Below are positions 1-64,000 of a DNA stretch of 64,000 nt, piece by piece. This stretch comes from Histomonas meleagridis 2922-C6/04-290x (taxonomy: Eukaryota; Protista; Parabasalia), in NCBI GenBank assembly GCA_020184695.1, contig JAANOX010000193.1, positions 1 through 64,000 on the forward strand, given 5' to 3'. A program made the translations under genes and the position numbers. The notes under the pieces were generated by a model that worked only from the letters and a program-made list of their open reading frames with translations, was not told the DNA's origin and did no database searches. Every line of letters starts with the position of its first letter. Positions within the stretch are counted from its first letter, which is position 1.

Positions 1-1259
1 CGTTAGGAACTATTATAGGAGATAATGAAGAAAGACACTTAAACAACAACCAAAATTTATAATACATAAACTCACAAGATGTATATTCAAAGATATGATA
101 TAAATCCAACAGCAGAAATATCATTAGAAAAAAGGAAAGCATATATTTGTGATTTTCGTAAAAAAGCTCTTGCAGAAACACATTACAATATGATCTTACA
201 TAACAGTCATGCACATAATATTTCAAAAAAAGAAAATATTAAGTCAACCAATTAATGATAGAGAAATTTTTTTTAACAAATGTAAAAAATGGATATTCGC
301 AAATGATTTTCAAGAATCACAACATATAATTAGACTACCAAGGTCAAATAAAAATATAAAAAAAAATATAAACAAATAAGTAATGCATTCGAAAATAAAA
401 TATTACCCCGCATTAAAAAATGTGAAACTAAAGATAAAACAGAAGAAGAATGGATTATATTCCAAGGTTGTGAATGTAAAATTAATTCAATATTAAGAAA
501 AACAACCAGAGAAGCTTTAAAAATTTTAATAAATCATATGTCAGATTTAAATAATAACAAAAATAAAGGTAATAATGATAATATTCGAAATATAAATCTA
601 AGGAGAAAATATATTCAAAAAAATCAATCATCTAAAATAATATCACACATGGAAAAATAATTAAACTTAAAAAACTACAAGAATCAGATACAAGAATTAA
701 TCATATTATTTATATAGTAGAAGCAATTAAAATAGCTTTAAACAAGATTGATAATGAGATATTAATTAATACATTTGGAGATAATAATATTAATAATATT
801 AGGAATATTATAGATGAAGAACCAAATCATTGTGAACAAAGAATTAAATATATGAAAAATACATTAATCAAATATCAAGATGAAATATCGATATAAATAA
901 ATAAAAAATATTGGAGATTTGTATTTTTACGGCAAATAAACGGTCTTCATTCAAAATCAATCAACATATGTTAATAAATTGTTTTGGCGCCAAAGTCATT
1001 CGATATATGAGCAAAGTAGAGAATCAAAGAGCTGCAATAATATCTGAACATCCAAATTTTTTTTCTTTTGATCATCCAAGTTCTTCTTCTTCTTAATATC
1101 AATTAGATTCAAAATTTCTAATTTATGCCGAATATCAAAGATGAATCGTTCTGGGTTTCAGCAATTTTATATTCAATCTATACGTAAATTTCACACAAAC
1201 AAAAAAACTGGTTGTAATTCGAAATTCAAAATTTATATCAAAAATGGTATTATTTACGC

Positions 1260-2300
1260 ATGAATTCTCGAAACATTTATCACAATCATAGCATGAATGG
1301 ATTATATATTGAAAGTCATATTCCACTTATTACAAGTGAAGAAAAAGATATTTTAAGACAAGGTGTATTGAAAGAAATTTATTTCACGAGTTTGAGGAAA
1401 ATGATTAGCGCAAATTTGGTGCAAAAGCAAATGTATATTGTTAGGAGAAATAATAAAAAAGAATATCTATCAAATAAAATTCATAATTTACAACATTATG
1501 TTGAGCAGATTATAGGTAAATTTGATTTTTTTTGGAAATTTGATTCTGACAATAAATTTCATAATCTATTATTAATTAATTTTAGAATTAGATTATGTTC
1601 ATATGCTCAAGATATTATATTGGCAATATAAGAGTATTTTTAGTCAATAGGCTAAAATTTGCCTATTGCTAAAAAAAATATAATTAATAAGATTTTTCCA
1701 TTTTTATCAATAGTTTACTGTAGATTACATATTGAGAGAAATATTCAAAAACAAATTGATGTTGTTAAGTCAGGGAAAGAAATTCTTCAATATTTTTTAA
1801 ACTATGTTCATGTAAAAAATAAATAGGGATCAATATATTCGATATTTGCAAAGTATCAATTGCATTTACTCGAAAACTAATAAGCTTATTACCAATTTAA
1901 TTAATGATATTGATCATTATGATCCAAAAATTTTCAATACCCTGATTCTTAGTGGGCATACGACAACTAATTCAATTGAGGTGCTTTTCGGAAATATTAA
2001 AAAGCAAACAGAACATAAAAGATTATCTTCGGAAGAAATTACATGTTCATCAGTAAAGCAATGCGAATATCTAATCAAACAAATTATATCTTTTGAACAA
2101 TCAAAAATAACTAATATAAATAAAATGATTCAGGTGAATATGCAATTTCATATCTCAACAAAAGATATGAAGTATGTATAAAAATAACCCAAATGTTACA
2201 AAACGAAAATCCTTTAATTCGTCAAAAAGCTCATGAAAAAATTGATATATGCAATTGCATCAAAAATGATCTACCATGTGTACATATTTTATATAAAAGA
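1260..2300 (+). mobile_element. Decayed Mutator-like (MULE) transposase remnant
   Basis: Fragmented ORFs 1260-1631 and 1846-2181, the latter with GHTTTNSIEVLFGNIKK (MULE TTNxxE-type motif). SWIM-like CNCIKNDLPCVH at about 2250-2285. Ends not defined. Confidence 0.6.
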
Positions 2301-2691
2301 ATGATAGATTAAAAGAGATGAAATTCCAGAAAAATATTATTCACATTCATTAACTAATAAAAATTAAACAAAGGCACTTATTGAAAAGGTATATTTACCA
2401 ACAGATGAAAATCGGTTTTATAATAATTTGATGGATCGATTAACTCTATATATTTCAATTGCTACTAAATCGAAGAGAAATAAAGAACAGTTTCATTAAT
2501 TGCCGTACGATAGGGAAAGAAATTTAACGGCCCCTAAATCGTCTAATATGGCCACTTTTTGAGTAGCTTCTATCGTCAAAAGTGGAGTAATTTTTATGTA
2601 GTGTAATTATATGACATAATAACGTGAGAAAATAAATATCGTTAATAAATCTATAGCCAAAGAACGTCCAAAATTACCGTTTAAATGTCTG

Positions 2692-4540
2692 ATGTACTTT
2701 TCACAGCAGGATGAAAAAATACGTATTTTGATACAAAGACATCTAAATGAACCTTCCATCGCAAAACAATTAAACAAACCTCCATCTACAATTAAATCGT
2801 TCGTGAAATCATATTCCATAAAAAAAAAGTTATTTCCGAAAAGAGGAAGAAAATTAGTTGTTTGTAAGGTTTTCAGAAAACCTTAGAGCATCAATTAATA
2901 CTGAATTCAGATCATGATCGATGAAAATCCATTTTTAACATTGAAAGATATAAATCAGAAACAGAAATGATTTCTCAATACATGTATGAAAAAGGTGATT
3001 GTTATATATTCGAAAATAAAAACGTCTACATTGTACATATTTATACTGTTACACACGAAGAGAAAAAGAATTCAATCAAATATTGTGATTCTTTAGTCAT
3101 CGATGGTACATCAATTTTCAATTTTATTGATCGGACAATAATATAACTTTCACTCCAGATAAATAATATGGAATCGATGTCAGGCGGAGTTGCTTTTTCT
3201 TCATCGAAGAATTTTGAATTTTATTTTTAATTGATTTGTATTATATTATCAATAGCACCCAACTTAAAATGCATAATAAGTGATGAAGATCCTGGTATTT
3301 GTTCAGCAATGGATGAATATCCGAATTTATGTCATCTTTCATGCTTAAAACACGAAATTGCCACTGTCCAAAAATTGAATATCGAAAAATCATCGAAATA
3401 ACAACCGATTTTTAATGTTAGTTAATTTATTTTTATTCACGTTATTCTGCTCAGTTAAATCAAGCCTTAAATAATTTTTATGAGGAATTCCCTGAAATTA
3501 TTCACTATTTTGATACCAATATATATCCAATTATATCAAAACTTTTGGTTTCATTAAGACCTAATGTATTTTATTTTAATCATACTTCTTCACAACTTGG
3601 TGAAACATATAATAGTATGATTAAAAGAGATTTGACAAATTCTCTATAGCATCTCTATGAAATCCGTGATCACATATCTATTAAATTATATCAAAAAAAA
3701 AAATTGAAGAAAATATTTGAAGAAACGCTTACTTTTCATCATCCATAAACAGAAGATTATAAACTTGATATTTCTAAAAAATTATGTTCAATCATAGATG
3801 CTGAAATCCAGAATGTATTACAAATTGATATTAACGCATTGATGATCTATATATTGCTATTGGTAACAATTATAATGAATTTAATATAAATTTTCTTGAT
3901 TGTGAATGCCATTATCCTGCACATGCTGGATTACCTTGTTGTCATTTGAATAGCTTAATTTAAAATAACAGGTAATACATTCTTTATTCATTTAATAGAT
4001 TCAAGATCCATAGAAAATTTAGATGAAATGTAAATAGCATAACATGAAATTGAAGAAAAGCCTGAATTTATACAACCCTTAGGAACATACGAAATGCCTG
4101 AAGACGAACATTTTCCAGAATATCCAGAAAGAACAGAAGAATATGAAATATTGAAAGATAAATTTTCTGATTATTTATACGAAGAAAAAGACCATCAGAA
4201 GTTTGGTTCAAAATAAGGAGAAAAGAAAGAAGAGGATTTTTGTGATTTAATCGAATTTATTGATGATGAATTTGATTTTTCGTTTGGATGAAATGACGAA
4301 TCTGCACAAAAAATGCCAAAAAATAAAGTCAATAAATTTATATCAAAAACTAATGAGTATTTCGAAAAAAATTTAATCAATAGGATCACGATATTTAAAT
4401 GTTTTTCATTAAGTTTAAAAGAATCTAAATAAAGAACATGATAAGTATAAACAAAAAACACAATTTGGAGAAGGTAAGATAAAAATAAGAAGGAACGAGG
4501 GAAGACCTATAATGAAAAGATTATCTAAAAATTCACAAAT
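2692..4540 (+). mobile_element. Second decayed Mutator-like transposase
   Basis: N-terminal HTH-like ORF 2692-2886, then fragments LVIDGT, DEDPGICSAMDEYP (about 3281) and YTSSQLGETYNSMIKR. SWIM CECHYPAHAGLPCCH at 3901-3945 and C-terminal GRPIMKR near 4500. Many stops and frameshifts. Confidence 0.65.
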
Positions 4541-55327: not shown

Positions 55328-56740
55328 ATGAACTATAAAAAATTGCCAAAACGTCATGCTTATTTCCAATTTGGCCATCACTTTGGATTGGAAGAGGAAT
55401 TAGATAGTCAATTTGATGATGAAGATAAAATAAAAAAAGCTAAAAGAAAAAAATCAAAACGTTATTTAGGTGTTTTACATTCATTGAATGCCAAAATTGA
55501 CGCAACCATCAATGCCTTGAAAACACTGACTGATTTAATCCTTGATATTGAAATTCCTTTTGAGTCAAAAGATGTTGAAAAAATTATTAATTTCTATCAT
55601 CAATCAGCACAATTAAAAAAATATGCACAAGAACTTATCTCATATATGTTTTGTTTTCCTCAATACCATCAAATGTTTTTTGAAAGTGGTATATTTAATG
55701 ATATGATAACAAATTTCCAAGATTCAACATGGTTAAATGGAATAAGTAGTTACATACTGTGTGGTCCAGAGTATCGTAATAAAATTATTCAAACAGGTGT
55801 TATTCAAAAAATAATTGAAGTCATTACTCCAAAATCTAATCAAAAGGAGTCAATTGTTTCTTTTGATTACGAGCTTCTTTCATGTGTTGCCATTGCGCTT
55901 GTGCACTTTCCAATTAATGATCCAAATGAATGCGATATTGTCATTCGCTTATACTCTATTCTAAGAGGAATTATGACATTTCTTCAAATTGATGGTGAAA
56001 CAGCAATTCTTAACGCCATTTGTTGGCTTCCTTTGTATAATCCACAGTTTGTAAATATCCTTATTGATTTTGATATAATTTCTTATTTTAATTCTATTGG
56101 GGTTATCGCCCATCAAAATCAGTGTCGCATTGTTTCAAAATTTGTTCAAATTATGGCAAAACAATTTCCAGATTATATCCAACATATGATAGAACATAAT
56201 GTTTGGAATCTTATAGCTAATTTTTTTGAATGGTCAATAAATGCAGAAATGTTTCGACGTCAAGCTTATATCATAGGTTCTGGTGCATTTATAATTGCTT
56301 CATATGATCCAAGAAGTTTCATCAACTCCAATGTTTACGTTTATTTTTTCAGGTGCTTTAATTTTGTCACTTTTCGCATAAGGTCTTTAATGTCTAAAAT
56401 TGAATATTGCGTTGCTTCTAAAGTAACAGATCAAGAATTCGCGATGTTAATGAGTTCAGAGGAATTTAGGTATATATTATTTACTGTTGAACCAGAACCT
56501 TTAGAAACTGATTGTTTGGAATTATTCGATGCATTCACAAAAACAATTATAAGAATCACTCAATTAAATGAAGCAGAAAGTTTGTTAAATGAGCTAATGG
56601 AAAATCAAAATGTGAATGAATGCATTGAAATTTTTAGAAATTCATTTGAGGCTGGAAACTGGGAAAAAATCAGTAAGGAACAATTCGATGAAATTGCATC
56701 AGATGTTGAAGAAAAGCTTTCATCTTTGTTTGTTGAATAA
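55328..56740 (+). CDS. Hypothetical all-helical (ARM/HEAT-like) protein, 470 aa
   Basis: Intact ORF with helical amphipathic periodicity; no diagnostic catalytic motif. Confidence 0.55.
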   Translation: MNYKKLPKRHAYFQFGHHFGLEEELDSQFDDEDKIKKAKRKKSKRYLGVLHSLNAKIDATINALKTLTDLILDIEIPFESKDVEKIINFYHQSAQLKKYAQELISYMFCFPQYHQMFFESGIFNDMITNFQDSTWLNGISSYILCGPEYRNKIIQTGVIQKIIEVITPKSNQKESIVSFDYELLSCVAIALVHFPINDPNECDIVIRLYSILRGIMTFLQIDGETAILNAICWLPLYNPQFVNILIDFDIISYFNSIGVIAHQNQCRIVSKFVQIMAKQFPDYIQHMIEHNVWNLIANFFEWSINAEMFRRQAYIIGSGAFIIASYDPRSFINSNVYVYFFRCFNFVTFRIRSLMSKIEYCVASKVTDQEFAMLMSSEEFRYILFTVEPEPLETDCLELFDAFTKTIIRITQLNEAESLLNELMENQNVNECIEIFRNSFEAGNWEKISKEQFDEIASDVEEKLSSLFVE

Positions 56741-57357
56741 ATAAAATCATAACATTTTTTTATTTGGAAGAAATTAAAATTTCTGTTTTGTTTCATTAAA
56801 AATACATTAAAACTCAGTTTTAAAGTGTCTAAAAACAGCTCTTTCATGTGGGATGTGACAACATATACAGGAAGTGTTTCTAAAGTTTCCAAACTTTGTT
56901 CAAATATTTGCCACAATTAAATATGAAATATTTTATCAACGCATTGAATATATGTTAGTAACACTTGAAATAAATAATGCATAATATATTATGTTGAAGA
57001 ATTTTGAAAAGAATTTGTGTTAAACGCCGAAAGTTCTTATGAAATATTCCAAAGATTAGCAAACTTAACAAAAATAACAGAAGAAATCAAAAGATATGAT
57101 ATGAAATTTCATCAAAACGAAAAAATTCATATTGCATGAAATATCTAAGCAAAAAGCTAAATAGGAAAATTAAGAAAATTTTCAACAAAAAATTAAAAAA
57201 TATTCAAATGATTTCAAAACTATAATCAAAGATGGAAAAAAAGGAAAGAATAAAAACATTTGCTGAAAATGCAAACAAAAAATATAATGAAATCATTAAA
57301 CTTATAAAACAAAAACAAAAAGAAACCCAAAAATATAACCAGTAATGAAATAATATA

Positions 57358-58638
57358 TAGGGTGGTGAAAAAGTCCTTGCGTCGGACTTTTTTTCTCTCA
57401 AATTTCAAGTAAATTTTTAAATTATCATTTATTTAGATGTAGTTACCATTGGCCTCTATTACCCTGAAAAGACCCTCCATCCATTCATTGTAAACATTTT
57501 CTAGGGTTGTTTTTGGTATTGCATAGAGTATTTCGGATACTTTCTCAAAAAGTTTTTTTTTTTTTTTTTCATCTTCAAATTCATATCCCTGAAGTTGATT
57601 TTTGATATACCCGAATAGAAAGAAGTCCGATGGTGCAATATCGGGTAAGTAAGGTGGGTGCTCAAGTCTTTAAATGCCTAATTCTTTTAGTTTGTTTGGG
57701 ACTAAATGTGGTCGAGCATTGTCCATGTGCAAGAAGTAACCTTTAGTTGAAATCTTTTTTGATAAATCTGATAGAACTGTTTCACTAAAAAAACACGGTT
57801 AAATTTCTGAGCTTTTCCAAGCATTGTGATTGACTTTATGCCCGTAATTGACCAAATCACCGAGATCATGACTGTTTTTGAATCAATTTTCCTTTAAACT
57901 CTTTCTGGAACCTGTTATTCTTCGTGAATCCACATTGAATTCCTTGGATTTGAAAAATAAATCCAACTTTCATCTTGTGTGAGTACCTTTCTTAGCTTGT
58001 TCCCGTCTGCATTTGAAAGAAATTCAAAAAGTTTAGTGGCCATTTCTTTCCGTGTTTTTTTGTTTTGTGCGGATAAGATATGAGGTATCCATTTAAAATT
58101 AACATGCTGCATGTTTAATTCATAAATCAAAATGAATTTAACAGATTTTTGTCGACATTTAAGTGTTTTGCAATTTTTCTTGTGCTTGCATAGGGGTTTC
58201 CTTCAAGGTATTTCCTAATTTTGGGAATTAACTCTAATTTTTTTGGTCTCCCAGTTCGGATACGATTAAAAATTGTATGAACACCTTCTTTCATCTTCTG
58301 CGTTCGATCCTGTATTGAACGGAGAGAAATGGCATTGCTTCCATATACATTGTAGATTTCTTGATATGTGGTTCGATTTTGGTAGCCTTTCATCCATAAA
58401 AAGTGGATTACTGAACGAATTTCGATTTGTAATTCATCCATTTATTGTACGAACGTACATCTCTAACGTACAACTAAACAAAAAATAAATGTATCAAACT
58501 GTGTGAACGATAATGTTCGTCTTCTAATACATCAATATGAAGCGTATTCCCTAAATTTTAAAACAATATATTTTACTATAATGAAAGAGTCTATATTGAC
58601 ATGAAAAGTTGACGCGCAAGGACTTTTTCACCACCCTA
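57358..58638 (-). mobile_element. Full-length (1281 bp) decayed mariner transposon
   Basis: Perfect 24-bp TIRs TAGGGTGGTGAAAAAGTCCTTGCG (57358-81 / 58615-38) with TA at 57356-57 and 58639-40. Transposase from 58441 with LTQDESW, LHMDNARPH and PYLPDIAPSDF; frameshifts and stops. Confidence 0.93.
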
Positions 58639-59535
58639 TATAAAAATTAAAATAAATTCTTGAACTAAGTAAAAATAATATTTGGAATCAAAAATTAACA
58701 AAGAATTAAATATAAATACAAATGAACAAGCGGGAGAAATTGTTCAAACAGAAATTAAAAATGCAAATTTTCACATTAATAATATTGCAAATAATAAAGT
58801 AGAAAAAAACATTAATAAACACATTGAGCAATTCATACTATTGTGCAATTGGAATTTAAATAATTATATCAATATTCCGGCAAACATGCAATATGATAAT
58901 TCAGTAGCAAACTTCCAATAGAAATAAAGAAATTATAGTTTATAAAAATTGAATTAATTCCTTGATAATAATTGTAAATGCATTCTCTAATTAGAGTTAA
59001 CTGGTGCACCCGTCATGACTATATTAACAGTACGTATCGCAAAAATTAAAAAGTTGAAATAATTTTTTTTATTATGTTTCCATTAAATGAAATTGTATCT
59101 AAAGTTACTATATGTTAAAATTTAAAAAACAATGTGTATTGATCTTCTTGTAACACTGGGAATATTTTTTAAAAATCTTTTCACTATTATTTTATCGAAA
59201 ATTTGAACAAATGTGTATCACATTCTATTTTTATTCATATAAGGTACTTGCCGTCCTTGGATAGGCTTTTATATATATGGAAAAGATCTTTATCAATTCA
59301 GAAACAATATCGTCTGCGTCATTTCATTCCAGATTCCGATCAGTTTTTTCACGAAACATATTTGAACCAATTAACTGCCGACTGCGTTGTTTCTCATACA
59401 ATTTTTTTCAAAAATTCAAGAACACAAACAATTTATAACCGTTATCTCCACACAAATCCAACACATGCCTATGAAAAACTGACTAAATCAAAGCTCTTTA
59501 ATGGGACATTTATTTCATTGGTCACTTCGTATAAA

Positions 59536-62415
59536 ATGAATGAAGATACTGCAAGTATTAATCAAGAACTTCATCTTGATGAAGGATTAGAATTAGAAGA
59601 TGACTATGAAAAATGTTCTCCGAAAACGCAAAAATATGTAATTGCCGGAGTAACAATTGCTGTAGTGGTGATCATGTTGATTGTCTTGATGGTTGTTTTA
59701 ATACCTTCAAATGATAAGCCTATTTCTAATGACACTAATCAAACTAATTCAATTGCACCAAACCAAACATCTCTGATACCTACAGAAACAAATCAACCCA
59801 CAATGCCTACTCCTACGAATCCTCCTGTACCTACAGAACCCTTACCTACTGATTTAAGCTATATTACACTTGATGCAAATGCAGGCAGTGGTAAGCAAAT
59901 CAAAAAAGCTTATGTTCCAGGTCAAATTTTTGATGAATTAACTCATGATTTTTATAGAGAGGGATATAAATTTAATGCTTGGTGTTTTTCATCCTCTTGT
60001 GAATCCAAAGTACTATTTCCATATAAATTTAATGGTAACGTTACATTATATGCAAATTGGACCAAAGCAGACTATAAAAATATAACAATTAGTTTTCATC
60101 CATTAGGTGGAATTGGAACTATGAATCCACTTCATTGTACTTCAGATACATTAATACAAAGTATTCCAAATGGTTATCGTAGGACTCAATATTATTTTTC
60201 AGGTTGGTGTGCTGATCCTGGATTACCTATACCTGTTGTATTTCCACGAAAATTTACAGAAGATATTACATTGTATCCAAGATGGGATCTCCTTTCCAGT
60301 GCTGATGGTAAAATTACATTTGAAAGTAATGGAGGAAATGGAACAACTTTACCAATGGTCTGTTCATTTAACCAACCAGTACAAGAAATATTAAATACAT
60401 TTACTCCACCATCAAATGAATATTATTTTGATGGATTTTCTGAAAAAGACTCAAAACCAAAACTACTTTCAAATGAAGTTAAAAAAGTTACATTTCCATA
60501 TAACTTTACACGTAATGTAACATTTTTGCCAATATGGACAAAATATGTTTATCATACAGTTACATTTCATTTTAATGATGGCAAACCACAAAACAAATCC
60601 CAAAGTTATTTAAATGGAACAGAAGTAACTGAATTTACAAAACCTACAAGAGAGAATTATCTATTTGCTGGATGGTTTACATCAGAAGATCTTAAAGATG
60701 ATAAAAGAATAATATTCCCAATTCAAATCACTAAAAGTTTTGATGTTTATGCTAAATGGATTGATTATAAAGTTGTTGGTACAATTACATTTGATTCTAA
60801 TGGAGGATTTGGTACAATGCAACAACAATCTTTTCCATATGGAGTAATTATTAATGAATTCATTTCAACATTTCATAATACTGGATATGATTTTAATGGA
60901 TGGTATTTAACTCCAGAATGTACACCTGAATCACTTCTTAAGTTTCCATTTGTTTTCAAGCAATCAATGACTGTTTATGCTTCTTGGAAACTTAATATTC
61001 CAGAAGGAAAATGTTTAGTTGTTTATGACTTAAATGGCGAAGAAGGAAAAATAGAAGGACAATTAGGAACAATTGGTGACAATAACTTTGTATATCTTGA
61101 ACGACCACCGAAATTAGTTATGTCTAATAAGAAAGCATTTATTGGATGGTCGACCTCTAAATCAGAAAAATATTTCTTATATTCATATTTCCAACAGTGT
61201 ACATTAAATACCTGGAAAATCACAAATCAAATATTATGTCTATATGCCCAATGGTCCACAGATTATTATAGTATAACATTTGATCCTCTTGGAGGAGCTG
61301 GTAATATATCACCACTTTATGTCGACAAACAACTCCATAAAAATTTAGAAGTATATATACCTAATTTCACAATTACAAAGCCTAAAGCACAATTCCGAGG
61401 ATGGAGTACTATTTCAGGTCGATTAACACAATACTCACCATATATGCCTATGCCAAAGAATACAATAAACAGTGACATAACACTATATGGTGATTATATA
61501 GAAGAACTAATAGTGGATGGTGGAAATAGTGAGAAGTATAAAGGACAAACAATTTGGTTAAAGGGAATCACACCACCATCAAATGAAAGTAATTGGGTAT
61601 CACTTAAAAAATATCCGAATTGCAAAACATATCCATGGAAACACGGAGATGATTGGTGGAATGTAGCGAAGGTGGAACCATACGAAGGTGGTTTTGATTC
61701 TGATATGTGTTGGGCAGGCCACGCATCCAATGCACTTCATTGGTTCTGTGACCGTAATAAGAAATATATTGAGAAATATTTCGAGTTATTCCCGGACAAA
61801 CCAAAACCTAATATATCATATACTGATATTGACAAAAGTGGAATATTTGATGATATCAAAAAACATTGGATAAACGATGGTAACCAACCAGTCAATGGTT
61901 ATAACTGGTTTATCAGAGGCTTATTTGAGGAAGGCGGTGGTTACTTCAAAGATGTATTCCAAGATAAAGTTATAATCGATGTAACAGAGGGATCAGTAAG
62001 TTATGTAACACGAAAAGAATTTAACGAGTTTATTACAAACGCATTTGAAAAAGGAATATTCGTTGGTTGGGCAGTGGACTATGGTACAATCGCTCCACAT
62101 GCACTAACTATTTATGGCGTTAAATATGATGATGATGGATGGATAAGGAAAGTTTACTTTGTCGATAGTAATTCGAAAGGATTCCCAACAAGTGATGGCC
62201 GTTTTGCAGGAATGTGGGAGGGCAATATTATATATTACGATTTGGACATCCCAGATACTTGGAATAGAGATAAGGAAATGTATCCAAATAAGAAACCTAT
62301 TGCACATATGAAATATTGCTTTGATAAATGGGATGTCGTTCGAATGTTGGATTCATTTTACTTAGGACAAGACGTTTGGGAAGAATTCCTTCAAAAGAAT
62401 CAACCAAAGAAATAA
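59536..62415 (+). CDS. Type II membrane protein (959 aa): TM helix, Pro/Thr stalk, 7 InlB B-repeats, IdeS/Mac-1 family cysteine protease domain
   Basis: ATG 59536 with TCACTT initiator at 59522-27. TM YVIAGVTIAVVVIMLIVLMVVLI. Repeats end TLYANW, TLYPRW, TFLPIW, DVYAKW, TVYASW, CLYAQW and TLYGDY. Protease motifs: IWLKGITPP, DMCWAGHASNALHWF, PHALTIYG, VYFVDSN and LGQDVW. Confidence 0.88.
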   Translation: MNEDTASINQELHLDEGLELEDDYEKCSPKTQKYVIAGVTIAVVVIMLIVLMVVLIPSNDKPISNDTNQTNSIAPNQTSLIPTETNQPTMPTPTNPPVPTEPLPTDLSYITLDANAGSGKQIKKAYVPGQIFDELTHDFYREGYKFNAWCFSSSCESKVLFPYKFNGNVTLYANWTKADYKNITISFHPLGGIGTMNPLHCTSDTLIQSIPNGYRRTQYYFSGWCADPGLPIPVVFPRKFTEDITLYPRWDLLSSADGKITFESNGGNGTTLPMVCSFNQPVQEILNTFTPPSNEYYFDGFSEKDSKPKLLSNEVKKVTFPYNFTRNVTFLPIWTKYVYHTVTFHFNDGKPQNKSQSYLNGTEVTEFTKPTRENYLFAGWFTSEDLKDDKRIIFPIQITKSFDVYAKWIDYKVVGTITFDSNGGFGTMQQQSFPYGVIINEFISTFHNTGYDFNGWYLTPECTPESLLKFPFVFKQSMTVYASWKLNIPEGKCLVVYDLNGEEGKIEGQLGTIGDNNFVYLERPPKLVMSNKKAFIGWSTSKSEKYFLYSYFQQCTLNTWKITNQILCLYAQWSTDYYSITFDPLGGAGNISPLYVDKQLHKNLEVYIPNFTITKPKAQFRGWSTISGRLTQYSPYMPMPKNTINSDITLYGDYIEELIVDGGNSEKYKGQTIWLKGITPPSNESNWVSLKKYPNCKTYPWKHGDDWWNVAKVEPYEGGFDSDMCWAGHASNALHWFCDRNKKYIEKYFELFPDKPKPNISYTDIDKSGIFDDIKKHWINDGNQPVNGYNWFIRGLFEEGGGYFKDVFQDKVIIDVTEGSVSYVTRKEFNEFITNAFEKGIFVGWAVDYGTIAPHALTIYGVKYDDDGWIRKVYFVDSNSKGFPTSDGRFAGMWEGNIIYYDLDIPDTWNRDKEMYPNKKPIAHMKYCFDKWDVVRMLDSFYLGQDVWEEFLQKNQPKK

Positions 62416-63428: not shown

Positions 63429-64000
63429 TTATTGTTTAATTAATTCCCAAGATTCCTCGATATTTTCTTGAGAAATTCTGAGCCATGATTCAACAAGAAT
63501 TTCAATTGATACTTGATATGTTATGTTTTATGTTTGGTTCTTGAAAGCCAAATGCTCAAATTTATTTCGAGTTCTTGATTTAAGTTCCCCAAATACCTTA
63601 ACATCAAGAGATTGATATTTTGATGTTCCCTCGGCTGGAACAGATATTATCTCAATTTGAAGCTCTTGAGCTTTCAACTTAACATTTTCTGCTTGATGAG
63701 CAGGAAAAATGTCCCAAACTATAGCACATGGTTCACCATTGGCTTCATTATGAATCCATTATAAATAGGAAATCAGAATATCATCATTAGCCCATTTACG
63801 TTCAGTATGGGTAAAAATCAAATTTTCGTTTGATTTCTCAAATTCTTCTCGGACATATTCGTTTTGCCTTTGGCAATAATCCGAAGCGGCAACTTTGACC
63901 CATTTGCATTAATTGTTGCGATGGCCGTCAAAGTTAATTTCTCGTTTCGGATTGATTGGATTTTAATCGTTGGCACTCCAATCTTGTGTAATACTTTTGC
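63429..64000 (-). mobile_element. pogo-like DDE_1 transposase 3' part, runs off the window
   Basis: EKLTLTAIATINANGSKLPLRIIAKGKT, IVWDIFPAH and YQSLDVKVFGELK on the minus strand, with one internal TAA. Confidence 0.85.

What the first reader, a model, noticed from the sequence alone, without database searches (positions are those of the whole stretch)
61540..62415. IdeS/Mac-1 family (IgG endopeptidase-like) domain in a protist surface protein
Seen versus streptococcal IdeS motifs recalled from memory: TIWLKGITPP ~ SVWTKGVTPP; DSDMCWAGHASNALHWFCDRNKKYIEKY ~ DDLLCGAATAGNMLHWWFDQNKDQIKRY; GGYFKDVF ~ GGIFDAVF; HALTIYGVKYDDDGWIRKVYFVDSN ~ HVINLWGADFDSNGNLKAIYVTDSD; LGQDVW ~ TGQDSW. Putative catalytic Cys (61708-10), His (62098-100) and Asp (62164-66) are present and the ORF is intact. 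Established: IdeS (MEROPS C66) is a bacterial protease that cleaves IgG hinges. Inference: a laterally acquired, surface-displayed protease that could cut host immunoglobulin or another mucosal protein. I know of no report of this family in parabasalids. Substrate cannot be read from sequence.
Basis: partly seen in the sequence, partly recalled or inferred. Interest (0 to 1): 0.88.

Follow-up and report, generated by a model that had tools for sequence, protein, structure and literature searches.

The report
Bacterial-type IdeS/Mac protease on Histomonas surface
The poultry parasite Histomonas meleagridis carries an intact, membrane-anchored copy of a bacterial IdeS/Mac-type cysteine protease, a family whose studied members cut antibodies or complement. 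It almost certainly came from gut bacteria, is a plausible but untested immune-evasion enzyme, and is not discussed in any paper I could search.

Summary
Window 59536..62415 (+) is an intact 959-aa gene. Its C-terminal ~305 residues are a true Mac-1/IdeS (MEROPS C66, PF09028) domain:
- Pfam scores 54 bits against a 20.3 cut-off.
- IdeS in the PDB matches at E 3e-14 with the single sequence and 5e-39 with a profile.
- The AF2 model (pLDDT 92.8) is closest to T-Mac C0362, IdeS and IdeC.

The window is Histomonas meleagridis. The gene sits among clearly eukaryotic genes and is nucleotide-identical in the virulent and attenuated strain assemblies.

The architecture is a short N-tail, one TM helix, a Pro/Thr stalk, seven Listeria-Bacteroides (Flg_new) repeats, then the protease. 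The Flg_new-to-Mac-1 junction is shared with Bacteroidales lipoproteins.

Ten eukaryote-context sequences form one clade (SH-aLRT 100) nested among gut Bacteroidota, Mucispirillum and Treponema sequences. This points to one lateral acquisition followed by duplication.

The three other Histomonas copies are defective: an early stop, a Cys-to-Ser change, and a decayed fragment.

The substrate is unknown. Birds have no IgG, and the best structural match (T-Mac) cuts complement rather than IgG.

A GenBank paralogue is auto-named "Mac 1", but no paper found discusses it. The scan separately noted the Cys-to-Ser paralogue elsewhere in this genome.

The parts
59522..59527 (+). Inr-like TCACTT element, 9 nt upstream of the ATG
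   Evidence: Read directly from the sequence. The resemblance to the trichomonad initiator consensus TCA+1Py(T/A) rests on my own knowledge. Its function was not tested.
59536..62415 (+). Complete CDS of 959 codons plus a TAA stop. The stop is embedded in TAAA.
   Evidence: ORF. The product equals public gene model P0001 on H. meleagridis contigs WSYJ01000113.1 and JAANOX010000193.1. The CDS is nucleotide-identical in the two strains.
59536..59634 (+). Acidic N-terminal tail (aa 1-33), presumed cytoplasmic
   Evidence: Net charge is -7, with three Lys residues just before the TM segment. Homologues carry KKKK-type juxtamembrane runs. The orientation is inferred.
59635..59706 (+). Single transmembrane helix / signal anchor (aa 34-57)
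   Evidence: It is the only hydrophobic segment in the protein, with a Kyte-Doolittle 19-mer mean up to 3.3. The same feature is present in P0003, P0006, P0008, P0009 and the L014 paralogue.
59707..59853 (+). Pro/Thr/Asn-rich stalk (aa 58-106)
   Evidence: Composition is 11 P, 10 T and 7 N in 49 residues, with 3 N-X-S/T sequons.
59854..61497 (+). Seven Listeria-Bacteroides (Flg_new) repeats (aa 107-654)
   Evidence: Pfam PF09479 scores 148.9 bits with 5 stretches passing on their own. TIGR02543 scores 51 bits. Seven units end in the LYA-W-type motif at aa 171, 246, 330, 404, 480, 569 and 650.
61498..62412 (+). Mac-1 / IdeS (MEROPS C66) cysteine protease domain (aa 655-959)
   Evidence: Supported by Pfam, PDB sequence search, the AF2 model and fold search.
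61669..61671 (+). Lys712, aligned with the oxyanion-hole Lys84 of IdeS
   Evidence: From the alignments. It is Lys in all 10 eukaryote-clade sequences and Gln in the nearest bacterial relatives.
61708..61710 (+). Cys725, the predicted nucleophile (IdeS Cys94)
   Evidence: It is an invariant column in the 35-sequence alignment.
62098..62100 (+). His855 (IdeS His262)
   Evidence: It is an invariant column.
62164..62166 (+). Asp877 (IdeS Asp284). Asn879 lies at the IdeS Asp286 position.
   Evidence: From. It is Asp in the whole eukaryote clade, and Asn (as in papain) in many bacterial relatives.

Best explanation
The gene encodes a single-pass membrane protein of Histomonas meleagridis. Its C-terminal domain is a catalytically competent IdeS/Mac-family (C66, papain-like clan CA) cysteine endopeptidase.

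Shown:
- Family membership by sequence and by fold.
- An intact Cys-His-Asp triad plus the oxyanion Lys.
- An intact ORF, nucleotide-identical in two strains.
- A eukaryotic genomic context.
- A bacterial-type Flg_new-to-Mac-1 junction.
- One well-supported eukaryote clade nested within gut-bacterial sequences.

Inferred:
- An ancestor of Histomonas and some related, unnamed gut parabasalids took up a Flg_new-Mac-1 surface-protein module from a gut bacterium of the Bacteroidota, Deferribacterota or Spirochaetota kind.
- That ancestor replaced the bacterial lipoprotein or fimbrillin anchor with an N-terminal signal-anchor helix and a glycosylated Pro/Thr stalk, and expanded the repeats to seven.
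- The protein inserts N-in/C-out, so the protease is held at the tip of a long stalk outside the cell.
- There it cuts extracellular host proteins at specific sites.

Every characterised C66 enzyme cuts a humoral defence protein: IgG, IgM, or C3/C4/factor H. The most likely targets are therefore avian IgY, IgA or IgM, or complement C3-type proteins, met in the caecal mucosa and liver. Which of these it cuts cannot be read from the sequence.
For: Family membership:
- Pfam Mac-1 scores 54 bits against a 20.3 cut-off, and Flg_new scores 148.9 bits.
- IdeS chains match at E 3e-14. A family profile matches at 4.8e-39 across the whole IdeS chain.
- The AF2 model has pLDDT 92.8 and pTM 0.90.
- The 12 Foldseek hits at E<=0.001 are all C66 structures: T-Mac C0362 at 3e-17, IdeS at about 1e-15, and IdeC at 3e-14. 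The next hit has E 4e-3.
- Catalytic columns are conserved.

Genomic context:
- Eukaryotic neighbours lie on the same contig.
- The contig is H. meleagridis, and the CDS is identical in both strain assemblies.
- GC is 0.33 and GC3 is 0.19, like the neighbouring genes. The Bacteroidales homologue contig has GC 0.54.

Origin:
- The Bacteroidales protein P0004 (lipobox, Mfa-like, one Flg_new, Mac-1) shares both the repeat-to-protease junction and the C-terminal GQDVWEEY motif.
- In the tree, 10 eukaryote-context rows form one clade at SH-aLRT 100. That clade sits inside a 42-row group (98) with Ornithobacterium, Cryptobacteroides, Mucispirillum and Treponema.
- All Atlas Mac-1 clusters are at least 96% bacterial. 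They are fused to lineage-specific surface anchors: fimbrillin, Big_2, choline-binding repeats, autotransporter.

Expression:
- Runs flagged as RNA hold 98-99% of the gene's sampled words, against 75-83% for the upstream flank. A 2013 run holds 51% against 14%.

Substrate precedents:
- IdeS cuts IgG, IdeSsuis cuts IgM, and T-Mac cuts C3/C3b/C4/FH (PMC11833123, PMC4404118).
Against: - No activity, localisation or protein-level evidence exists. 'Mac 1' is absent from the held supplements of the surfaceome and antigen papers, although their naming may differ.
- The RNA evidence is weak, because the 2023 runs also hold most of a presumed intergenic flank. Read laying failed.
- Membrane orientation is inferred. 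The N-tail is net acidic.
- The IdeS Asp286 position is Asn.
- Birds have no IgG, and their immunoglobulins lack an IgG-type hinge (my own knowledge).
- T-Mac shows that the fold does not imply immunoglobulin cleavage.
- The gene is identical in the attenuated strain, so it does not explain attenuation.
- The other three copies in the genome are defective, which could mean the family is being lost.
- The tree is a 'quick' search with a midpoint root, and most bacterial rows have no taxon label.
Confidence: 0.72

Rival explanations
1. It is an active surface protease, but aimed at non-immune substrates. Candidates are caecal mucins, extracellular matrix, or surface proteins of the bacteria that Histomonas depends on and eats. 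The role would be nutritional or microbiota-directed rather than immune evasion.
For: - Histomonas grows only with bacteria. The genome paper links bacterial-type membrane protein families to bacterial feeding (PMC8529796).
- The closest bacterial relatives are gut commensals rather than classical pathogens.
- Other laterally acquired clan-CA enzymes of trichomonads (NlpC/P60) target bacteria (PMC10461829, listed).
- Nothing is known about the substrates of the Bacteroidota, Mucispirillum and Treponema branch.
Against: Every C66 enzyme with a known substrate cuts a host humoral defence protein. The family is a narrow-specificity endopeptidase, not a bulk digestive enzyme.
Confidence: 0.15
2. 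It acts mainly as a binding module or adhesin. The protease-like domain and the Flg_new repeats would bind a host or bacterial ligand, and catalysis would be weak or irrelevant.
For: - A full-length paralogue keeps the whole architecture but has Ser-Gly in place of the Cys-Trp nucleophile motif, so a non-catalytic role is viable in this family.
- Flg_new repeats occur in bacterial surface proteins such as the Listeria internalins (Pfam and NCBIfam descriptions).
Against: - This copy and 8 of the other 9 eukaryote-clade sequences keep Cys, Trp, His, Asp and Lys. That pattern is hard to explain without selection for catalysis.
- Confidence at the active-site regions of the model is high.
Confidence: 0.1
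3. It is bacterial contamination, an assembly chimera, or a dead gene.
For: Histomonas cultures are xenic or monoxenic, and the assembly was Nanopore-based (PMC8529796). Three other copies in the genome are defective.
Against: - The gene lies 59 kb into a contig full of eukaryotic genes.
- It is present and identical in two independent strain assemblies.
- It has AT-rich, host-like codon usage, a eukaryote-style TM anchor, and an uninterrupted 959-codon ORF.
- Homologues in other samples are flanked by UCH, Ras, ankyrin and chromo-shadow genes.
Confidence: 0.03

Closest known systems
IdeS / Mac-1 of Streptococcus pyogenes (MEROPS C66; PDB 1Y08, 2AU1, 2AVW, 8A47)
   Same: - Homologous over the whole catalytic domain (profile E 4.8e-39).
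- Same fold (Foldseek E about 1e-15, TM 0.62-0.74).
- Cys, His, Asp and the oxyanion Lys sit at equivalent positions.
- The N-terminal WxKG(I/V)TPP motif and the C-terminal GQD(S/V)W motif are shared.
   Different: - Only about 20% identity.
- IdeS is a small secreted enzyme, whereas this domain is the C-terminal head of a 959-aa membrane-anchored eukaryotic protein.
- Asp286 is Asn here.
- There is a 7-residue insertion before the nucleophile and a roughly 14-residue insertion near the C-terminus.
- The host animal has no IgG.
T-Mac C0362 (TDE0362 C-terminal domain) of Treponema denticola (PDB 9ARC, 9MDK, 9MDM, 9MDO)
   Same: It is the best structural match (E 3e-17). It is a cysteine protease carried at the C-terminus of a multi-domain surface or secreted protein, behind beta-rich repeat domains.
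   Different: - T-Mac has Ig-like (Big_2) N-terminal domains and is released by PrtP cleavage.
- It cuts C3, C3b, C4 and FH but not IgG or IgA (PMC11833123).
- Its sequence match to the window is weaker (E 6e-10).
IdeSsuis / IdeC (streptococcal IgM proteases; PDB 9HB1, 9HB2)
   Same: Same family and fold. They show that C66 enzymes can cut immunoglobulins other than IgG.
   Different: They are Gram-positive secreted or cell-wall-associated proteins with about 19% identity to the window domain.
Uncharacterised Bacteroidales lipoproteins with Mfa-like + Flg_new + Mac-1 architecture (e.g. P0004), and IdeS/Mac-family proteins of Ornithobacterium, Cryptobacteroides, Mucispirillum and Treponema from poultry and other guts
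   Same: - They are the nearest sequence relatives outside the eukaryote clade (30-35% identity).
- The Flg_new-to-Mac-1 junction and the C-terminal motif are identical in kind.
   Different: - They use a bacterial signal peptide or lipobox and a fimbrillin-type anchor.
- They have one Flg_new repeat instead of seven.
- They carry Gln and often Asn (as in papain) where the parabasalid clade and IdeS carry Lys and Asp.
- None has a known substrate.
[quoted passage not shown]
   Same: They set a precedent for parabasalids acquiring clan-CA papain-like enzymes from mucosal bacteria and using them outside the cell (PMC10461829, PMC10318531).
   Different: They belong to a different family, act on a different substrate (peptidoglycan), and occur in a different parabasalid lineage.

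Membership tests
MEROPS C66 / Pfam PF09028 (IdeS/Mac family cysteine endopeptidase) | The family HMM matches above the curated threshold | tested here: met
   Mac-1 scores 54 bits against a gathering cut-off of 20.3. NCBIfam returned no IdeS-specific model at E<=0.01.
MEROPS C66 / Pfam PF09028 (IdeS/Mac family cysteine endopeptidase) | Sequence homology to solved family members over the whole catalytic domain | tested here: met
   phmmer gives E 3.2e-14. The profile gives E 4.8e-39 over IdeS residues 3-290 of 292.
MEROPS C66 / Pfam PF09028 (IdeS/Mac family cysteine endopeptidase) | Papain-like alpha/beta fold with the IdeS-specific elaborations | tested here: met
   The AF2 model has pLDDT 92.8. 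The top 12 Foldseek PDB hits are all C66 structures at E 3e-17 to 3e-14, and the next hit has E 4e-3. Atlas structure hits are all Mac-1 clusters with TM up to 0.81.
MEROPS C66 / Pfam PF09028 (IdeS/Mac family cysteine endopeptidase) | Catalytic Cys-His-Asp triad (IdeS C94/H262/D284) and an oxyanion-hole residue (K84) | tested here: met
   Cys725, His855, Asp877 and Lys712 align to these positions. Cys and His are invariant across 35 sequences.
MEROPS C66 / Pfam PF09028 (IdeS/Mac family cysteine endopeptidase) | Extracellular location (secreted or surface-displayed) | tested here: inconclusive
   The protein has a single N-terminal TM helix, a Pro/Thr stalk and 15 N-X-S/T sequons. These fit a type II ectoprotein, but the topology is only inferred.
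IdeS-type IgG-specific hinge endopeptidase (functional class) | Cleaves IgG once in the lower hinge | not testable with these tools
The host is avian and has no IgG (my own knowledge). The structural homologue T-Mac does not cut IgG (PMC11833123).
IdeS-type IgG-specific hinge endopeptidase (functional class) | Second acidic residue Asp286, reported as functionally important in IdeS (my own knowledge) | tested here: not met
   This position is Asn879 here and Asn, His or Ala in relatives. It varies across the family, so it does not define C66 membership.
Listeria-Bacteroides repeat (Flg_new, PF09479 / TIGR02543) surface proteins | Tandem repeats of about 70 aa that match the family models | tested here: met
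   PF09479 scores 148.9 bits with 5 stretches, and TIGR02543 scores 51 bits. Seven units were read from the sequence.

The most novel reading that the evidence does not exclude
This is the one fully intact, catalytically competent copy among the four family loci found in H. meleagridis, and part of the first eukaryotic clade of IdeS/Mac (C66) proteases. In this reading it is a real immune-evasion enzyme. Tethered on the parasite surface, it would cut avian immunoglobulin (IgY, IgA or IgM) or complement C3 during caecal and liver invasion. That would make it both a new avian-Ig or complement-specific protease tool and a surface vaccine or drug target for blackhead disease, which currently has no licensed treatment.
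Probability: 0.3. Interest if true: 0.78.

Novelty: new member of a known kind. Interest (0 to 1): 0.6.

Why it matters
- C66 proteases are described as bacterial (PMC10318531). A eukaryotic clade with its own membrane anchor extends the family to protists. It also adds a clean case of a parabasalid taking an immune- or mucosa-facing surface enzyme from gut bacteria.
- For histomonosis, which has no licensed treatment or prophylaxis (PMC8529796, PMC9610433), a surface-exposed, probably active and highly specific protease is a concrete, testable virulence and vaccine candidate. Vaccination with the related IdeSsuis protects pigs (PMC13064264 abstract).
- If its substrate proves to be an avian immunoglobulin, it could also become a reagent, as IdeS is for IgG.
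- The limits are clear. The function is untested, the gene is unchanged in the attenuated strain, and GenBank already carries the automatic 'Mac 1' label.

Tried and rejected
- As a substitute I compared word shares for the gene against an upstream flank. The 2023 'RNA?' runs discriminate poorly. The 2013 run discriminates better.
- The search for related loci with the 35-sequence alignment found no conserved stretch. It worked with a 9-sequence alignment.
- NCBIfam has no matching IdeS model.
- Literature searches for IdeS, C66 or PF09028 together with Histomonas, Trichomonas or protists found nothing relevant.
- The genome paper and its held supplements do not mention Mac-1 or C66. The held supplements of the surfaceome and antigen papers have no 'Mac 1' entry.
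- The DNA of the ENA homologues in ERZ17292902-4 could not be fetched, so their organisms remain unnamed.
- Contamination, chimera and pseudogene readings were rejected for this copy.
- The strict 'IgG hinge protease' reading was rejected as unsupported.
- The 1070-aa TTG-initiated ORF from 59203 was rejected as a mechanical artefact. The first ATG is at 59536.
Full report
**What is there**

The ORF listing gives one long ORF ending at 62415. Its mechanical TTG start at 59203 is an artefact. The first in-frame ATG is at 59536, 9 nt after a TCACTT that resembles the trichomonad initiator (the consensus is my own knowledge). The resulting 959-aa product is letter-for-letter the public gene model (P0001).

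The protein reads as follows:
- An acidic tail, aa 1-33.
- The only hydrophobic segment of the protein, aa 34-57, with a Kyte-Doolittle mean up to 3.3.
- A Pro/Thr/Asn-rich stalk, aa 58-106.
- Seven Listeria-Bacteroides (Flg_new) repeats, aa 107-654. PF09479 scores 148.9 bits and TIGR02543 scores 51 bits.
- A C-terminal domain, aa 655-959.

The C-terminal domain matches Pfam Mac-1 (PF09028) at 54 bits against a 20.3 cut-off. It matches solved IdeS chains at E 3.2e-14. A profile of the domain with 34 homologues matches IdeS at E 4.8e-39 across residues 3-290 of the 292-residue chain.

An AlphaFold2 model built on the alignment has mean pLDDT 92.8 and pTM 0.90. Its 12 Foldseek hits in the PDB at E<=0.001 are all C66 structures:
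- T-Mac C0362 of Treponema denticola, E 3e-17.
- IdeS, including the IgG1-Fc complex 8A47, E about 1e-15.
- IdeC of S. canis, E 3e-14.

The next hit, a papain-family enzyme, is at E 4e-3.

Cys725 (61708-61710), His855 (62098-62100) and Asp877 (62164-62166) align with IdeS Cys94, His262 and Asp284. Lys712 (61669-61671) aligns with the oxyanion-hole Lys84. The position of IdeS Asp286 is Asn879.

**Whose gene it is**

The protein is encoded on Histomonas meleagridis contigs WSYJ01000113.1 (GCA_020186115.1) and JAANOX010000193.1 (GCA_020184695.1). The window coincides with the start of the latter. The CDS is nucleotide-identical in the two assemblies. These are the virulent and attenuated strains of PMC8529796.

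The rest of the window encodes a BEACH protein, cytosolic IleRS, a CPSF_A-like protein, RhoGEF-Kelch, a HECT ligase, UCH and DUF3447-ankyrin proteins. The IleRS is 70% identical to Tritrichomonas foetus and 62% to Trichomonas vaginalis.

The gene's GC (0.33) and GC3 (0.19) are host-like, whereas a Bacteroidales homologue lies on a contig with GC 0.54. Contamination or chimerism is therefore excluded for practical purposes.

**Relatives**

An exhaustive HMMER search of 1.84 billion representatives found 303 proteins at E<=1e-3 and only 9 at E<=1e-30. The top group scores 167-274 bits. It comprises a second Histomonas protein, which GenBank names 'Mac 1' (P0002), and proteins from ENA metagenome assemblies.

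Where the neighbours of the ENA proteins carry Pfam hits, those hits are eukaryotic: DUSP-UCH, chromo-shadow, Ras/Arf and ankyrin. The full-length members (P0003, P0006, P0008, P0009) share the same architecture of tail, TM helix, stalk, Flg_new repeats and Mac-1 domain.

After a gap come bacterial proteins at no more than 131 bits:
- Ornithobacterium rhinotracheale and Spirochaetia/Treponema MAGs, named.
- Candidatus Mucispirillum faecigallinarum, Candidatus Cryptobacteroides merdigallinarum, Bacteroides and Treponema genomes, found by genome scan.

One Bacteroidales protein, P0004, has a lipobox, an Mfa-like fimbrillin domain, a single Flg_new repeat and the Mac-1 domain. It shares with the window both the repeat-to-protease junction (…D.TLYA.W…GG.SE.YKG.T.W.KGITPP) and the C-terminal GQDVWEEY motif. 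The unit that moved therefore included at least one Flg_new repeat plus the protease.

None of the clusters I inspected contains a T. vaginalis or T. foetus protein.

**Phylogeny**

I built a tree of 111 domain sequences (IQ-TREE quick search, LG+C20 PMSF, SH-aLRT only, midpoint root). The following were left out:
- Fragments with fewer than 190 matched positions.
- Bacterial hits matched in more than one stretch, including P0004.
- Redundant cluster members.
- P0010, P0016, P0055 and P0154.

The ten eukaryote-context sequences fall in one clade with support 100. That clade sits inside a 42-row group with support 98, together with Bacteroidota, Deferribacterota and Spirochaetota sequences. The three Histomonas copies do not group together within the clade, so the duplications predate the split from the unnamed metagenomic parabasalids.

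The clade shares two insertions that the bacterial relatives lack. It also shares Lys and Asp at two catalytic-site columns where most of the nearest bacterial relatives shown have Gln and Asn, as papain does. The simplest reading is one bacterium-to-parabasalid transfer followed by duplication. The donor phylum is not resolved.

**The family within Histomonas**

Four loci were seen:
- The window gene is intact and has the full catalytic set.
- In L001 (WSYJ01000118.1) the full reading frame, including a TM helix, carries an in-frame stop after codon 17 of the tail. The GenBank model P0002 therefore starts at an internal Met and lacks the anchor.
- L014 (JAANOX010000205.1) has an uninterrupted 938-codon ORF with the same architecture, but Ser-Gly replaces the Cys-Trp nucleophile motif. 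This matches in kind the earlier scan note s1-309662.
- L013 (WSYJ01000186.1) is a decayed fragment, about 60% identical to the window gene. It has several stops and ends just before the nucleophile.

Of these four, the window gene is the only apparently complete and catalytically competent copy.

**How it most likely works**

Shown: family membership, fold, catalytic residues, intactness, eukaryotic context and bacterial ancestry.

Inferred: the N-terminal helix acts as a signal anchor (N-in/C-out), the Pro/Thr stalk is glycosylated, and the seven beta-rich repeats hold the protease away from the membrane. There it would make specific cuts in extracellular proteins.

Across bacteria the Mac-1 domain is repeatedly fused to lineage-specific surface anchors: fimbrillin-like domains in Bacteroidota, Big_2 in spirochaetes, choline-binding repeats in Bacillota, and autotransporters in Pseudomonadota. 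The parabasalid TM anchor looks like one more solution to the same need.

Every C66 enzyme with a known substrate cuts a humoral defence protein:
- IdeS cuts IgG.
- IdeSsuis cuts IgM (PMC4404118).
- T-Mac cuts C3, C3b, C4 and factor H, but not IgG or IgA (PMC11833123).

Histomonas lives in the caeca and invades the liver of birds, which have IgY, IgA and IgM but no IgG (my own knowledge). 'IgG endopeptidase' is therefore not a safe label. 'Host humoral-protein endopeptidase, substrate unknown' is the defensible one.

The rival readings are a non-immune substrate (mucus, matrix or bacterial prey) and a mainly adhesive role. The Cys-to-Ser paralogue shows that a non-catalytic role is possible. 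However, Cys, Trp, His, Asp and Lys are kept in nine of the ten clade members, which argues for catalysis in this copy.

**Expression**

Runs flagged as RNA from this organism hold 98-99% of the gene's sampled words, and a small 2013 run holds 51%. As a control, the upstream 57000-59400 stretch is held at 75-83% and 14% respectively.

**Novelty**

PMC10318531 describes C66 as containing bacterial proteins. I found no paper linking IdeS, Mac-1, C66 or PF09028 to Histomonas, Trichomonas or protists. The Histomonas genome paper and its held supplements do not mention the family. GenBank nevertheless carries automatic 'Mac 1' and 'Listeria repeat-containing protein' names for paralogues.

I therefore rate this as a new, eukaryotic and differently anchored member of a known protease family. 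It is well supported as to what it is and open as to what it cuts.

Noticed in passing
window 63531-63758 (-) and 63821-64000 (-): A remnant of a pogo-like DDE_1 transposase (PF03184, 32.5 bits) lies 1.1 kb downstream of the gene. It is frameshifted relative to the adjoining ORF piece, which runs off the window end.
   Followed up: partly
L014:4001-6817 (H. meleagridis JAANOX010000205.1): A full-length paralogue (938 codons, same TM-stalk-Flg_new-Mac-1 layout) has Ser-Gly in place of the Cys-Trp nucleophile motif, with His and Asp kept. It is a candidate pseudo-protease. The GenBank model (P0055, 749 aa, 'Listeria repeat-containing protein') does not cover the whole ORF.
   Followed up: partly
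L001:~1090-3962 (H. meleagridis WSYJ01000118.1): In the paralogue behind GenBank 'Mac 1' (P0002), the frame extends upstream through a TM helix and a repeated Pro/Thr stalk but is interrupted by an in-frame stop after codon 17. The annotated model therefore begins at an internal Met and has no anchor.
   Followed up: partly
L013:4686-5285 (H. meleagridis WSYJ01000186.1): A decayed partial duplicate of the window gene (about 60% identity, several stops) is annotated as a 94-aa hypothetical protein. It ends just before the catalytic Cys.
   Followed up: partly
window 56700-59200: A chain of short minus-strand ORFs lies here with no long ORF. The 2023 'RNA?' runs still hold 75-83% of its sampled words. 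It may be a decayed gene, an unannotated transcript, or DNA carry-over in those libraries.
   Followed up: no
alignment columns of Lys712 and Asp877: The parabasalid clade and streptococcal IdeS share Lys (oxyanion hole) and Asp (third triad residue). Most of the nearest gut-bacterial relatives have the papain-type Gln and Asn. This may be parallel change or a sign that the true donor lineage is unsampled.
   Followed up: no
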